In this document: in pieces, positions 5,139 through 9,721 of the stretch
Layout: the number at the start of each line of letters is the position of its first letter
Numbering within the stretch: the first letter of the stretch is position 1
Source of the DNA: Selaginella moellendorffii
Taxonomy: Eukaryota > Plantae > Lycopodiophyta
Assembly: GCF_000143415.4 (NCBI RefSeq)
Contig: NW_003314319.1
Span: forward strand, 586,365-650,364
Direction of reading: 5' to 3'
Length of the DNA: 64,000 nucleotides
Program-made: the position numbers and the translations under genes
The notes under the pieces: generated by a model
Told to the model about the DNA's origin: nothing
What the model saw: only the letters and a program-made list of their open reading frames with translations
Databases searched by the model: none

Positions 5139-6591
5139 ATCACTAATATAGGCTGTGTTTGTTAAATAAATTTCAAAGTGTATTTGGATGTGGTTTATTA
5201 ATATAATGCATTTAATCATATTATGAAATTTAAATATATTATCACTATGGATTTTTAAAACCTTCTTGTTCTCCCCAACCATAACATGATAGTGGTGGAT
5301 GAGTATAGCAAATCCTACATCATAAACACCATCTTTTAGCTGTGTACAGCTTATGGAATGGTTGTGACTCGACAACACTAAATGAAATATAAAAAGTTTT
5401 AAGGGGAACACAAACTTTAGGGATAAAATAATTATAATTTTTTTTTAATACACAATAAAGAGAAAAAAAATAAAGTGCATTATATTTGGTATCAAAGAAA
5501 GGTTTAATTTTTACTGATTAGTGCCTATTTAACATAGAATATATCTTTAACTAAAATATATTTCTACCCTTAAAAATTGAAATCATACATATTAAATATC
5601 CATGAATATATTCTTTGTTTTTTCTTCACCTTAAATTAGTAGATTCAGTAAATTATATATATATATATTAATATATTGGAAAAATAATAATTAGTGAAAT
5701 TGTTCTATATAACTTCTGATAGCATGTAACTTGAGAGCATATTGTGGAGTTAGAATCTCACATTAGGTTAATTTATCAAACTATTCTAAACTAAAAATAT
5801 TATTGATGCTCTTCATTTATTTTAGAATTAATTTAGAGTGTATATATAGGTTTTTTCAATTGTTTTAAAATTTTATATTTAAAAAATTTCTTCATTAAAA
5901 AGCATTGATATTCTTTTTTTGTTTATAGTATTGCTAGTGGTGAAAAAAATACTAATACTATAATGCTACCACTTATTATTATTAATATTTTACAATATTT
6001 ATTTTTTCTAAAACTCTCTCAAGCCTGCTTTTGTCATGCTTGTATTCCTTGCCATGCTCGGCTTTAGGTCAGGTTTAATTCCTTTAAATAGGCATCACGC
6101 ATAAGCGATGATGACAGCCTCCCTGATGGTACGTTGAGCTTCAGAGGCATGATGCTCTTTGTTTTGTATGCTGGTGATGATGTGAAAGACGATGAGATTG
6201 GGATCTGTCCAAGGCGACCGTGGAGATATGACTATGCCAAAGGGTGCTTATTGACCAGGCAATCCTGGCATTTGATCAACTTGAGCTCAACGAGCGAGAA
6301 TACGTTGCCTTGTATACTTGGCTCCATCTGAAATCACTAACTAAAACTAGATTCAGTGGAATGGTCTGGGAAAAATGAATAAACCTTGGGAATTTTGCTT
6401 TATTGGTTTTCTGTACTGTGTTTTCACCTTGGACACTGCTCAATGGTAAAGTGTTCATAGTTCAGAGAGAAACAGGTAATTCATGCAAGTGTTCCATATT
6501 TTAACTAAGCTACTCCTAATTTTTTTTGTATTTTCTTTAATTTGTATCAGTACATTAAACTATATAGCTATGCATGCACGGACGACAAAGA

Positions 6592-7904
6592 CTACCTCCG
6601 CATGCTGAAACGGGGACGGCCGGGCTCAGGCTCGCCTTTAAGCCGGACCAGCGTGTAAGCAGCGGCTCCAGCTAAAGCACCAAATATTGGACCGACAATG
6701 TAGAGCCAGATGCCTTTGTAATTGTTGGCAGCAATCGCGGGTCCAAGAGTACGAACCGGATTCATGGAAGCACCCGAGGTGGATCTGCGTGAGATATGGA
6801 ACCATTTAGTGAGTGTCGTTCTAGAATCACTTGAGTTACTCTGGACTTTTACCCTGCAATGAGGATGTTGAGCATGACAGTTGCTCCTACGGCGATCCCC
6901 GCAAGCTCCCCCACCTTTGAGATATTAATGGATTGATAATCAGCAGAAAGACATCGAGCAATAATAACGGGGAAAAAGATCAGTGCTACTTACGGCCCGT
7001 GAGTCTGTGGCCACGGCAGTGACGACGAACATGAGGTTGAAGGAGATGATAAACTCGAGAACAAAAGACTCCCAGTAGCTTCCAGACGGGATCGTGACGC
7101 CGCCATGCATGAAAGGATTAAAGATGCCCTTGAGCGCAAACGCGGCACAGATGGACGCCGCGACCTGGGCACCGATGTAGAGAGGAACCTGTCCCGCGCG
7201 ATCGACAAAAGCTCGAGAAAGAGACCAAAAAGAATGAGAAAGAATGTACCTCAACCCAAGGGAAGTGGCGGAGTGCTGCGAAGGAGAGCGTGAGCGAGGG
7301 ATTGAGATGAGCTCCCGAGATATGGCCGGTGGCAAGGATGACGATCATGACCGCGAGGCCCGAGGTGGCGGCCAGTCCCACAGTGGTGATGCTCCCGGAA
7401 GTCTTCTCGTTGACAATGGCGGTGGCTGTCCCGGCGAAGATGAGCATGAAGGTGCCAATGAACTCTGCTCCAATCTACAAGAACAACAAAACCTTGTCCA
7501 GATCTCTAGATCTCCAAAAATCACGATGCAACGAAAAATCAGCTCTTCTATGCAATGTAGCAGCGAGAGAGGATGGATGGAACAGTCGCCAAGCAGCAAA
7601 AGATGGCAAGAAATGGTACCTTTTTGCGGCGCGAAATTGAGGAAGGGGCGATGGCGGCCTGGAATTCGCTGAAGAGTCCGTCCTCCATGACGCAGCTGTC
7701 GACCGGGAAGCATTTGTTGATCCGCCCCGAGCGTCCAAAGCTGGTGGAAACGTTGGAAATGCGATCCGGCGCCATTATGTACACGGGGCCGACGCCATTG
7801 CTGTTGCTGCCAGGGACAATCTGCGCAGTAACCGGAGCATTCGCATTCCCAGTCCCAGTCGCAGCGCTATTGACGAGATTTCCTTGTTGTTCTTCGTCCG
7901 CCAT
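6592..7904 (-). CDS. NIP-II aquaporin (NIP5/NIP6-type boric acid channel)
   Basis: IGAEFIGTFMLIF, GHISGAHLNPSLT (NPS), SGASMNPVRTLGPA (NPV); ar/R filter read as A-I-A-R; long N-terminus; ends RPRFSMRR*. Confidence 0.92.
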
Positions 7905-8070
7905 AGCTAGCAAAAAAAAAAAATCTTTTTTTTCCTGTTTTTTTTTTTTTCTTTGTTGTTGCTCGATGAGCTAGTGGTGATTCAAGAGAACCCCATCATC
8001 CGAGCAGGATTTTCTTCTTTTTTTTGGAAAAGATTTTGGAAAGGTCGGGAGAAGTGGAAAGAGGAGAGCT

Positions 8071-8076
8071 TTACAT
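8071..8076 (-). promoter_or_regulatory. Minimal uORF AUG-UAA in the NIP 5' leader
   Basis: Minus strand ...gtcaatcATGTAAagctctc..., ~167 nt upstream of the NIP ATG in a pyrimidine-rich leader. Confidence 0.65.
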
Positions 8077-9721
8077 GATTGACAGACTTTTTTAGAGATG
8101 GGATCAAGGAAGCAGGAGAATGGCTGTCGCGGAATCCAGAGCTAGCGTCGAATCAGAGCTTGGTCGTCGTCGTCGCTAGTGGCATCAATCGATGGAAAAC
8201 ACCTGCGCGAGAAGCACCATTGAATCAAATCCAAAAGACTCAAAGCAAGAATGAAATAGAGGAATACCGCTGAGAGAGCTCGATGGATCAAAGTGCCGCA
8301 CAACCGCTCAAAGCCAAGCCCTAATGCCGAGAAGACAATGACGAGAGCTTTAAGAAAGAGCTGCGTGGCTGTGTGATTGATTCCAGGTGAAAAGTAAACG
8401 CGCTAGTTGGCTGTCTGAGAGCACAAAATTTTACTTCAAAACACTTAACTTCGCGGTGATCGTGCGCGAAGCCATCTCGCGTCAACTGTAGGAAGGAAAT
8501 GTAAGTTTATTGCAGGCTCTAGAATACTCGTTTTTCCTCTTTTTTACCATGCACGTCTCAATGGGTCAACTTGATGATGTTAATATTGTAATTATCATGA
8601 TTATTAAGCTCAATGAAATGCTTGTTTTTCCGTGCAGCTGTGAATCTTCCAGCCTAAAGCAGAGCGCCATGCAGCAGAGCTAGCTAGGACGCTAATGTAT
8701 ATATATATTTGGGTGTCAGCAAGAACAGCGCGTATAGCTAGACAAAATTCTTTCAAACTGCTCATCTCTAATTGATAGGATTTTAATTTCTTCTAAATTC
8801 TCAAATTCTTGTGACAAAATCGGGGCATATTCCGTGGGGTTTGAAAATGGTGGCTTTTGTCGGTTGGCTGTTTGTCCAATCATTTGTCCTTTTCTGCCCA
8901 CGCATTCAATGCATCGATCGAGTTTTCTCATCCTTTTCGTATTGATTGCTTCTTTGGAGCCTGCAAAAACGAAACACCACATGGAGTCTACAACCACAAA
9001 GGCGAGCTAGCAGCGGCAGTATGGTGGGCTTTTCTCGCGTAGCTGGGCAGTCGCGAATATGTTTAGTCGGGCCTCAGGAATAAGAAATGGACAAACGAGC
9101 GAAAGGGAAACGAAGAATCCCATGTTTGGTGAACCAAAACGTTTTGGTTGATGCTGGTGCTGCTTCCACTCAATCAAGAGCACAAAAGAAAACGTTTGTG
9201 TTATTGGCGGTACAAGCACACGCGGCCACCGCAGGAAATTTCCGCTGGAGACCTGGTGAATGAATCGACAGCAACGGGTTTAGCTTTTCCTGTAAGTAAA
9301 AGGGACGTACTTGAAAGCGAGCGAAGAAACGAAAGCAAAGCAGTCCAAGATCTTGACAGACCAAAGATCATATCACAGAGAATCCGCATTAGTCTAGGGC
9401 TCCAAGACTTCAAAAAGACGCAAAGCAAATCAATCCAACAAAGACAACGATTGACACAAAAATCCCAGCGATGCACGAAAGCACAAAGAAAGTGACGAAA
9501 TCATTCGAGCAGACACAGAAGATGGCGTTTGTCGAGAACAATAAACAAACTTTTCAAGAGAAACGACCCAAAACAAAAGTCCAGTACTTCGCAACGAAAC
9601 AAGCACTGGAAAAAAAGCAAACGAGCACAAAATCTACATTTATTTGCCACGAAGAAATCACGTCCAAAACTAGTATGAGAAAATGTGGATGAGCATTTTT
9701 TTTTGAAAATTTCTAACCTGT

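What the first reader, a model, noticed from the sequence alone, without database searches (positions are those of the whole stretch)
8060..8095. Candidate boron-sensing AUG-stop uORF upstream of a NIP-II boric acid channel
Seen: minus-strand AATC-ATG-TAA-A at 8076-8071, ~167 nt upstream of an NPS/NPV, A-I-A-R NIP, and apparently inside the leader (a plausible leader intron at 8203-8267 lies further 5'). Known: Arabidopsis NIP5;1 uses an AUG-UAA minimal ORF for boron-dependent ribosome stalling and mRNA decay; the context as I recall it is also AUC-AUG-UAA-A (to be verified). Inference: the ribosome-as-boron-sensor switch may go back to the lycophyte/euphyllophyte ancestor.
Basis: partly seen in the sequence, partly recalled or inferred. 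Interest (0 to 1): 0.85.

Follow-up and report, generated by a model that had tools for sequence, protein, structure and literature searches.

The report
Ancient boron-sensing AUG-stop leader, Selaginella NIP
The start-then-stop mini reading frame ahead of this spikemoss boric-acid-channel gene is real, is in the mature mRNA, and sits in a ~45-base cassette shared with the Arabidopsis NIP5;1 boron switch and with clubmoss, fern, conifer-like and moss genes, so the switch probably predates vascular plants; boron response in Selaginella itself is untested.

Summary
Observation confirmed. The window is Selaginella moellendorffii. The minus-strand gene (CDS 7904-6592, five exons, 319 aa) is SELMODRAFT_173700, an NPS/NPV NIP-II channel. 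AATC-ATG-TAA-A lies at 8076-8071, 172 nt before the main AUG.

Spliced RNA contigs from four runs (four studies) cover the hexamer. They confirm the leader intron 8267-8203 and reach at least 8396, so the hexamer is in the mature 5'UTR.

It is not a chance hexamer. It sits in a cassette: pyrimidine box plus stop-type triplet at -35..-28, A-rich run at -18..-12, A at -3, then AUG-UAA. I found this cassette in 17 copies upstream of related NIP genes: two Diphasiastrum genes, an unplaced non-seed-plant transcript, Ceratopteris, Ceratodon, a second moss-like transcript, a conifer-like transcript, Carya NIP5-1, another angiosperm transcript, and AtNIP5;1 itself.

A weight matrix built without Selaginella ranks 8076 first of 127,820 window positions (46 bits; next 11).

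Boron-dependent stalling and decay in Selaginella remain inferred.

Verdict: new member of a known kind, with notable evolutionary depth. No accessible paper reports it outside seed plants, but Tanaka 2016 could not be read. The scan holds a similar first-reader note (s1-420847) on another piece of this genome.

The parts
8071..8076 (-). Minimal uORF AUG-UAA (ATG 8076-8074, TAA 8073-8071), with A at -3 (8079) and A after the stop (8070)
   Evidence: Read directly. Inside RNA contigs of four runs. ATGTAA and the -3 A are invariant in all 17 aligned cassettes.
8088..8094 (-). A-rich element TAAAAAA at -18..-12. It corresponds to the conserved region 12-19 nt upstream of the AtNIP5;1 AUGUAA (the -139 UAUA), which promotes mRNA decay at the 5' edge of the stalled ribosome
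   Evidence: Columns -15..-12 are A in 11/11 ungapped modules, and three of them (-14..-12) stay invariant in all 17. The role in Selaginella is inferred.
8104..8111 (-). Upstream box TTCCTTGA: a pyrimidine run plus a stop-type triplet (TGA at 8106-8104, T at -30, in frame with the AUG). Function unknown
   Evidence: The T of this triplet is invariant. The triplet is TGA, TAG or TAA in 17/17 and lies 27 nt before the AUG in 15/17.
8069..8111 (-). Whole conserved AUG-stop cassette
   Evidence: A matrix built without Selaginella scores it 46.4 bits, rank 1 of 127,820 positions. A matrix without any lycophyte scores it 43.7 bits against 17.4 for the next hit.
8268..8396 (-). Leader exon 1. The 5' end is at or beyond 8396 and is not mapped exactly
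   Evidence: The X2 contig reaches 8396. There is no coverage at 8397-8760 in any run.
8203..8267 (-). Leader (5'UTR) intron, 65 nt, GT..AG
   Evidence: Joints in X3 and X2. Splice sites read.
7905..8202 (-). 5'UTR part of exon 2. The spliced leader is at least 427 nt
8153..8185 (-). uORF of 10 codons (MPLATTTTKL) in a weak start context (T at -3)
   Evidence: No conservation was examined.
7982..7999 (-). Second small uORF ATGATGGGGTTCTCTTGA, following a C/A-rich tract. At the matching place Diphasiastrum, Ceratopteris and Ceratodon have a second minimal uORF ATGTAG
   Evidence: The positional correspondence is judged by eye from the flanking A-rich tracts.
7909..7965 (-). Poly(A)/poly(T)-rich tract just before the main AUG
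   Evidence: Assemblies break here and read laying skipped it as a repeat. AtNIP5;1 has comparable A tracts.
6592..7904 (-). NIP-II coding region, five exons, 319 aa (SELMODRAFT_173700). The true start is 7904; the public model starts at internal Met44
   Evidence: The N-terminus MADEEQ matches Diphasiastrum MAEEQ.

Best explanation
This is the Selaginella copy of the NIP5;1-type boron-responsive AUG-stop leader element.

Shown:
- The mature mRNA of a NIP5/6-clade channel gene carries AUG-UAA 172 nt before the main AUG.
- The hexamer sits inside a ~45-nt unstructured cassette that is homologous, position by position, to the two AUGUAA sites of AtNIP5;1 and to copies in clubmoss, fern, conifer-like, moss and other angiosperm genes.

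Inferred by homology with Arabidopsis:
- A scanning 40S subunit starts at this AUG, which has A at -3. The 80S ribosome then has UAA in its A site at once.
- When cytosolic boric acid is high, release and recycling are slowed and the ribosome stalls. Following subunits are blocked and fewer reinitiate at the channel ORF.
- The mRNA is cut about 13-14 nt upstream (about 8089-8090), within the A-rich run at the ribosome's 5' edge.
- When boron is low, termination is quick and 40S subunits resume scanning. They pass or reinitiate after the small uORF at 7999 and translate the channel.

The net effect is negative feedback of boron on its own uptake channel. The element was already present in the common ancestor of mosses and vascular plants.
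For: - Hexamer and context.
- Presence in spliced mRNA in four runs, with no joint that removes it.
- Host gene: 100% identical to SELMODRAFT_173700, NPS/NPV motifs and an S-I-A-R filter, and membership of the 100/98-supported clade that holds every cassette-bearing gene including AtNIP5;1.
- 17 cassettes aligned, with invariant ATGTAA, A at -3, AAA at -14..-12, A at -23 and the T of the upstream triplet.
- A matrix trained without Selaginella picks 8076 as the single top hit of 127,820 positions (46.4 against 11.1 bits). Its flank-only score is 35.5 bits, z = 6.3, and no other position reaches it. The result holds without any lycophyte in the training set.
- In the conifer-like, moss-like, P0225 and angiosperm cases the cassette is on intron-free transcript contigs upstream of the ORF.
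- Controls lack it: two S. moellendorffii NIP paralogues and Amborella NIP6-1.
- No RNA structure and no Rfam family, which fits an element read linearly by the ribosome.
- Literature: AUGUAA is required for boron-dependent stalling and decay in AtNIP5;1, the conserved region 12-19 nt upstream promotes decay, and cleavage is 13-14 nt upstream. 'AUGUAA and the around sequences' are conserved among species. Most translated Arabidopsis minimal uORFs gain ribosome occupancy.
Against: - There are no functional data for Selaginella: no boron-shift expression, ribosome profiling, toeprint or degradome.
- Contigs cannot show transcription starts, so a share of transcripts could begin downstream of 8076. 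The A-rich element resembles a TATA box in seed plants, though less so in Selaginella.
- The Selaginella A-rich run reads UAAAAAA rather than the Arabidopsis UAUAAAAA. Its spacing to the AUG is 2 nt longer than at the proximal Arabidopsis site.
- Selaginella has only one AUG-stop, where most relatives have two or three. What is a second minimal uORF (AUGUAG) in relatives is a 5-6 codon uORF here.
- Boric-acid transport by this channel is untested.
Confidence: 0.72

Rival explanations
1. The cassette is a conserved but constitutive start-stop brake. It lowers and buffers translation of the channel in all conditions, and boron-specific regulation is an angiosperm (or Arabidopsis) refinement that is absent in Selaginella.
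For: Start-stop elements are generally repressive in other eukaryotes irrespective of boron (titles and abstracts listed). No boron data exist for any non-seed plant.
Against: In the published account the boron effect acts on termination at AUG-stop itself, and most translated Arabidopsis minimal uORFs respond. The decay-promoting upstream element is also conserved here. Conservation is specific to the boron-channel gene lineage and is absent from the paralogues.
Confidence: 0.17
2. The conserved block acts at the DNA level, as a TATA-like internal promoter or transcription-factor site inside the transcribed leader, and the ATGTAA is conserved as part of that site rather than as a reading frame.
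For: In seed plants, the fern and other copies the A-rich element reads TTTATAAAAA, a textbook TATA box 12-18 nt before the hexamer. The 2025 NAR paper reports RNA polymerase II pausing over the two ATGTAA sites and nearby STOP1 motifs.
Against: The invariant positions are exactly those that matter for translation: A at -3, ATG and TAA, 17/17. The Selaginella version, CTCTAAAAAAG, is a poor TATA box. RNA contigs run through the site from a spliced upstream exon. In Arabidopsis the hexamer's effect works through translation.
Confidence: 0.06
3. The ATGTAA is a chance hexamer in an AT-rich leader with no function.
For: The hexamer occurs 34 times in the 64-kb window on both strands, which would predict about 0.11 per leader.
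Against: The flank-only matrix score is 35.5 bits. The next best of the 34 ATGTAA sites scores -13.3, and no other of 127,820 positions reaches the Selaginella score. The element is conserved in 17 cassettes across land plants.
Confidence: 0.01

Closest known systems
AtNIP5;1 5'UTR AUGUAA minimal uORFs (positions -122 and -312; Tanaka et al. 2016 Plant Cell, known to me through citing papers; locus L090)
   Same: - Same host-gene clade.
- Same hexamer with A at -3 and ...AAUC AUG UAA A at the proximal site.
- Same A/U-rich block upstream.
- Same pyrimidine/stop-triplet box about 30 nt upstream.
- A-rich tracts between the element and the main AUG.
- Similar distance to the main AUG (172 against about 122 nt).
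   Different: - One copy here against two in Arabidopsis.
- The A-rich block reads UAAAAAA rather than UAUAAAAA and sits 2 nt further from the AUG than at the proximal Arabidopsis site.
- The upstream triplet is 27 nt away and in frame here, against 26 and 28 nt in Arabidopsis.
- The leader has an intron upstream of the element.
- The protein lacks the TPG repeat of seed-plant and fern NIP5 proteins.
- Boron response is untested.
OsNIP3;1 (rice) and other angiosperm NIP5;1 orthologue leaders
   Same: They are reported to share a conserved 5'UTR with AtNIP5;1 and a boron-responsive leader. Carya NIP5-1 and an angiosperm metatranscript carry two or three cassettes of the same design.
   Different: I did not fetch the rice sequence. 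The angiosperm copies are multiplied, while Selaginella has a single copy.
Generic start-stop (AUG-stop) elements of eukaryotic 5'UTRs, including SKU5 and NGAL1 in Arabidopsis
   Same: A start codon directly followed by a stop, no elongation step, and repression of the downstream ORF.
   Different: Those are defined by the hexamer alone. Here a ~45-nt flanking cassette is conserved for roughly the age of land plants and is tied to one gene lineage.
Conserved-peptide uORFs that sense metabolites (for example sucrose or polyamine control uORFs)
   Same: A small molecule is sensed by the translating ribosome on a leader ORF, giving feedback on the main ORF.
   Different: No nascent peptide exists here. 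Conservation is at the nucleotide level and the sensing step is termination, not elongation. (The comparison is from general knowledge and was not tested.)

Membership tests
NIP5;1-type boron-responsive AUG-stop leader element | [quoted passage not shown] | tested here: met
   ATGTAA at 8076-8071. It lies inside spliced RNA contigs of four runs and downstream of the confirmed leader intron.
NIP5;1-type boron-responsive AUG-stop leader element | Host gene is a NIP-II channel of the NIP5;1 lineage | tested here: met
   The 100/98-supported clade contains AtNIP5;1 and all cassette-bearing genes. NPS/NPV motifs and an S-I-A-R filter against A-I-G-R in AtNIP5;1. The gene is co-orthologous to NIP5;1 and NIP6;1, because that split lies within seed plants.
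NIP5;1-type boron-responsive AUG-stop leader element | Conserved A/U-rich sequence 12-19 nt upstream of the AUG (the decay-promoting element, -139 UAUA in Arabidopsis) | tested here: met
   CTAAAAAA at -19..-12 (8095-8088). AAA at -14..-12 is invariant in 17/17.
NIP5;1-type boron-responsive AUG-stop leader element | Flanking sequence homologous to the AtNIP5;1 sites | tested here: met
   Alignment A2 includes both AtNIP5;1 sites. Matrices trained without Selaginella rank 8076 first in the window.
NIP5;1-type boron-responsive AUG-stop leader element | Boron-enhanced 80S stalling at the AUG-stop | not testable with these tools
   This needs toeprinting or Ribo-seq with and without boric acid.
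NIP5;1-type boron-responsive AUG-stop leader element | Boron-dependent mRNA decay with 5' ends 13-14 nt upstream of the AUG | not testable with these tools
   Only assembled contigs were available, and they cannot show RNA ends or levels. The predicted ends are about 8089-8090.
NIP5;1-type boron-responsive AUG-stop leader element | Boron-dependent repression of the main ORF that is lost when the AUG is mutated | not testable with these tools
   A reporter assay is needed.
NIP-II boric acid channels | NPS and NPV motifs and a small-residue/I/small-residue/R selectivity filter | tested here: met
   NPS153, NPV264, S133-I252-A261-R267. Pfam MIP is recorded for the identical public protein.
NIP-II boric acid channels | Boric acid permeability | not testable with these tools
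   An oocyte or yeast uptake assay is needed.

The most novel reading that the evidence does not exclude
The sensor may be more than the hexamer: an ancestral land-plant cassette about two ribosome footprints long.

Its upstream box always ends in a stop-type triplet (TGA, TAG or TAA in 17/17, never TGG). In 15/17 the triplet starts exactly 30 nt, in frame, before the AUG.

On this reading the box is functionally read. It could act as a ruler or docking point for the queued second ribosome or 40S, or as a second termination-factor contact. That would set the gain of the boron response and of the cleavage at the stalled ribosome's edge.
Probability: 0.18. Interest if true: 0.75.

Novelty: new member of a known kind. 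Interest (0 to 1): 0.55.

Why it matters
Ribosome-as-boron-sensor regulation has been worked out in Arabidopsis and is described as conserved 'among species'. The accessible literature gives no case outside seed plants.

Finding the same cassette, flanks included, in Selaginella, a clubmoss, a fern, a conifer-like transcript and mosses dates this feedback loop to at least the moss/vascular-plant ancestor. That is before lignified vasculature, and it includes lineages usually thought to need little boron.

This gives three things:
- A concrete, testable handle on when boron homeostasis evolved.
- A natural series of 17 variants for dissecting which flank positions tune stalling and decay.
- A previously unremarked conserved upstream box to test.

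It also corrects the public gene model, whose start is 43 codons too far downstream.

Tried and rejected
1. In-frame stop idea. The triplet at -30 looked like a conserved in-frame stop closing an upstream ORF.
   - Rejected as a general rule: 9 of 11 cassettes have no in-frame ATG upstream, and the two AtNIP5;1 sites have 26- and 28-nt spacing, which is out of frame.
   - The triplet's stop-type identity (17/17) stays unexplained.
2. RNA structure or known RNA family. RNAalifold gives zero pairs on the 17-cassette alignment and Rfam gives no hit.
3. blastn-short of the whole Selaginella leader against the other leaders was swamped by poly(A) matches and is uninformative. The position matrix was used instead.
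4. The Brassica cretica protein P0154 is a mis-modelled fusion lacking exon 1, and no cassette lies in its 3-kb flank. AtNIP5;1 was reached instead via a cluster look-up.
5. The metagenome scan returned mostly bacterial AqpN-like genes. Only L010 was a usable plant transcript. L017-L019 and L069 are plant genomic pieces whose first exon I could not place.
6. The key papers could not be read: Tanaka 2016, Tanaka 2011 and Pommerrenig 2020 are not in the library. What Tanaka 2016 aligned is known to me only through citing papers.
7. No close Selaginella-species orthologue turned up in the protein searches, so within-genus footprinting was not possible.
Exon 2 (window:7250-7474:-) and the public protein P0158 stood in for it.
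Full report
**What is there**

The minus strand at 8080-8070 reads AATC ATG TAA A, with the ATG at 8076-8074 and the TAA at 8073-8071.

Downstream lies a five-exon gene with exons 7904-7620, 7474-7250, 7188-6994, 6914-6853 and 6784-6592. All introns are GT..AG and short. The product is 319 aa, with NPS at 153 and NPV at 264.

Residues 44-319 are 100% identical to SELMODRAFT_173700 of Selaginella moellendorffii. This identifies the organism. It also shows that the public model starts at an internal Met. The upstream start at 7904 gives MADEEQ..., which matches MAEEQ... of the Diphasiastrum orthologues.

Aligned to AtNIP5;1 A117/I236/G245/R251, the selectivity filter is S133-I252-A261-R267.

**Is the hexamer in the mRNA?**

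Yes. I laid Logan contigs of four runs from four studies on 6200-9000.
- All four carry the four coding introns spliced out, so they derive from RNA.
- X2's 1481-nt contig is continuous from 7620 to 8203, then skips to 8274 and runs to 8396.
- X3 shows a 65-nt joint at 8203-8267 with CT..AC ends, which is GT..AG on the gene strand.
- X1 covers 7966-8203 and X16 covers 7966-8096.
- No joint removes the hexamer.
- The contig breaks at 7909-7965 are caused by a poly(A)/poly(T) tract.
- Nothing covers 8397-8760, so the transcript probably starts near 8396. Contigs cannot fix the start.
- Allelic differences occur at 8086 (position -10) and 8128. The hexamer itself is invariant.

The spliced leader is at least 427 nt. 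It holds three upstream ATG-initiated frames: a 10-codon uORF at 8185 in a weak context, the AUG-UAA at 8076 with A at -3, and ATGATGGGGTTCTCTTGA at 7999.

**Chance**

ATGTAA occurs in 1.9% of dinucleotide-shuffled leaders. At the window-wide rate it would be expected about 0.11 times per leader. The hexamer alone would therefore be weak evidence. The flanks decide the matter.

**Comparative evidence**

I could not submit the spliced protein, because it has no reference. I searched with exon 2 instead, then with the Diphasiastrum protein P0011 and the public Selaginella protein P0158. I fetched the DNA around selected relatives. The table gives distances from the A of each ATGTAA to the A of the main ATG.

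| Source | ATGTAA positions | Other minimal or short uORF |
|---|---|---|
| Diphasiastrum complanatum, two closest orthologues (78% and 75% identity) | -216 and -203 | ATGTAG at -133 / -119 |
| Ceratopteris richardii (fern) | -203 | ATGTAG at -117 |
| Ceratodon purpureus (moss) | -392 and -246 | ATGTAG at -164 |
| Moss-like JGI transcript (P0208) | -255 and -99 | none noted |
| Conifer-like transcript (P0210, 86% to Cryptomeria NIP5-1) | -167 | none noted |
| Unplaced non-seed-plant transcript (P0225) | -176 | none noted |
| Carya illinoinensis NIP5-1 | -479, -292, -101 | none noted |
| Angiosperm NIP5;1 metatranscript (L010) | -236 and -107 | none noted |
| AtNIP5;1 (P0414, locus L090) | -314 and -123 in that accession | none noted |

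The AtNIP5;1 positions correspond to the published -312 and -122.

The transcript contigs are intron-free across the ORF. In those taxa the cassette is therefore on the mRNA.

**The cassette**

In the 17-sequence alignment A2 (ungapped column counts) the invariant positions are:
- ATGTAA
- A at -3
- AAA at -14..-12
- A at -23
- the T of a triplet near -30

Nearly invariant are T at -20 and the A's at -17 and -15. Positions -4 and -1, the other bases of the CTTTA run and the pyrimidine run before the triplet (TTCCTT in Selaginella, 8111-8106) are conserved in most copies (about 8-10 of the 11). Selaginella matches every invariant position.

A position matrix built from the ten non-Selaginella cassettes then in hand scores 8076 at 46.4 bits. 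This is rank 1 of 127,820 positions on both strands, and the next hit scores 11.1. With the hexamer columns removed the score is still 35.5 bits (z = 6.3). No other position reaches it, and the next best of the window's 34 ATGTAA sites scores -13.3. A matrix from fern, moss and angiosperm copies only gives 43.7 against 17.4.

The element is therefore homologous to the Arabidopsis sites and is not a coincidence.

**Specificity**

No cassette lies upstream of the two other S. moellendorffii NIP genes at locus L007, nor upstream of Amborella NIP6-1.

An ML tree puts all cassette-bearing genes, plus seed-plant NIP6;1, in one clade (100/98). The cassette-less Selaginella paralogue falls in the sister clade.

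The Selaginella gene is thus co-orthologous to NIP5;1 and NIP6;1. The cassette was kept on the NIP5;1 side and is missing from the one NIP6;1 gene checked. The moss sequences nest inside the clade with only moderate support, so I read the tree for clade membership only. One outgroup (P0032) landed on a long branch inside the NIP5;1 group, and I ignore it.

**How it most likely works**

The literature I could read says the following about AtNIP5;1:
- AUGUAA is required for boron-dependent regulation.
- A conserved region 12-19 nt upstream (around the -139 UAUA) promotes decay but not stalling.
- Degradation intermediates begin 13-14 nt upstream, at the ribosome's 5' edge.
- 'AUGUAA and the around sequences' are conserved among species.
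- Many translated Arabidopsis minimal uORFs gain ribosome occupancy.

From memory, and not checked here: boric acid is reported to stabilise eRF1 on the AUG-stop ribosome.

I map this onto Selaginella by inference:
1. Initiation occurs at 8076, aided by the A at -3.
2. The ribosome meets UAA immediately and stalls when boron is high.
3. Scanning subunits are blocked and reinitiation falls.
4. The mRNA is cleaved near 8089-8090, inside the A run at 8093-8088.

When boron is low, termination is fast and 40S subunits resume scanning across 172 nt, past or through the small uORF at 7999, to 7904.

The element has no consensus secondary structure and no Rfam match. This fits a linear, ribosome-read signal.

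**Rivals**

- A constitutive start-stop brake without boron specificity is possible, because nobody has tested a non-seed plant. It is disfavoured by the conservation of the decay element and by the restriction of the cassette to the boron-channel lineage.
- A DNA-level role (a TATA-like block, and Pol II pausing reported over ATGTAA) is disfavoured. The invariant positions are the translational ones, the Selaginella A run is a poor TATA box, and RNA reads through the site.
- Chance is excluded.

**Unexplained**

The upstream box ends in a triplet that is TGA (6 copies), TAG (6) or TAA (5) in all 17 cassettes. It is never TGG. In 15 of 17 it starts exactly 30 nt before the AUG, in frame.

It does not close a canonical uORF. 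The two Arabidopsis copies break the spacing, at 26 and 28 nt. I therefore reject 'conserved in-frame stop' as a rule.

The copies are related by descent and duplication, so the 17/17 count is only suggestive. A ruler for a queued ribosome is one idea worth a mutational test.

Non-angiosperm leaders also share a C/A-rich tract followed by a second tiny uORF. It is ATGTAG in Diphasiastrum, fern and moss, and 3-5 codons in the conifer-like and P0225 transcripts. In Selaginella it is the uORF at 7999.

**Novelty and limits**

Full-text searches found no paper linking AUG-stop or AUGUAA to Selaginella, lycophytes, ferns or mosses. Two of those searches were loosely framed, with a minimum of two or three terms, and add little.

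Tanaka 2016, Tanaka 2011 and Pommerrenig 2020 are not held. Their alignments may already include non-seed plants.

The kind of element is well known. This is a new member with unusually deep conservation.

The scan holds one similar first-reader note on another piece of this genome (s1-420847). It is probably the second haplotype, and I did not examine it.

Noticed in passing
window 7775-7904 (-): The public model SELMODRAFT_173700 (276 aa) starts at internal Met44. RNA contigs and the conserved MA(D)EEQ N-terminus of the Diphasiastrum orthologues support the start at 7904 (319 aa).
   Followed up: partly
window 8104-8111 (-); alignment A2: A pyrimidine box ends in a stop-type triplet (TGA, TAG or TAA in 17/17 cassettes, never TGG). 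It lies 27 nt before the AUG in 15/17. It does not close a uORF and its function is unknown.
   Followed up: partly
window 7982-7999 (-); L001 3868, L002 3882, L008 2884, L009 2837: A second tiny uORF follows a C/A-rich tract. It is ATGTAG in Diphasiastrum, Ceratopteris and Ceratodon, a 5-6 codon uORF in Selaginella, and 3-4 codons in the conifer-like and P0225 transcripts. The leader architecture seems conserved beyond the first cassette.
   Followed up: partly
window 7909-7965 (-): A long poly(A)-then-poly(T) tract lies directly before the main AUG. It breaks the transcript assemblies of three of the four runs. AtNIP5;1 has similar A tracts between the AUG-stop and the main AUG.
   Followed up: no
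L005 about 2521 versus L004 2522 (Carya illinoinensis, two assemblies): The distal (-479/-480) cassette differs between the two Carya assemblies. In L005 the A-rich block is disrupted and the matrix score drops below threshold. The outermost copy may be decaying or polymorphic.
   Followed up: no
L007 2793-3849 and 5041-6194 (S. moellendorffii GL377595.1): Two tandem NIP genes of the sister clade (one is the 'NIP5-1'-named P0252) have no AUG-stop within 1.2 kb upstream. The public gene range for P0252 appears to span both genes.
   Followed up: partly
L099 (Amborella NIP6-1): No cassette lies within 1.5 kb upstream of the start. The only ATGTAA, at -527, lacks the flanks. This suggests loss on the NIP6;1 branch after the seed-plant duplication, but only one gene was checked.
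   Followed up: partly
window 8761-9000 and beyond: Separate RNA contigs in three runs mark another transcribed unit upstream of the NIP promoter region. It was not characterised.
   Followed up: no
run X16 (organism B): A run labelled with a different organism code holds this mRNA with few differences (none in the piece over the cassette, 7966-8096). It may be a labelling difference or a very close relative.
   Followed up: no
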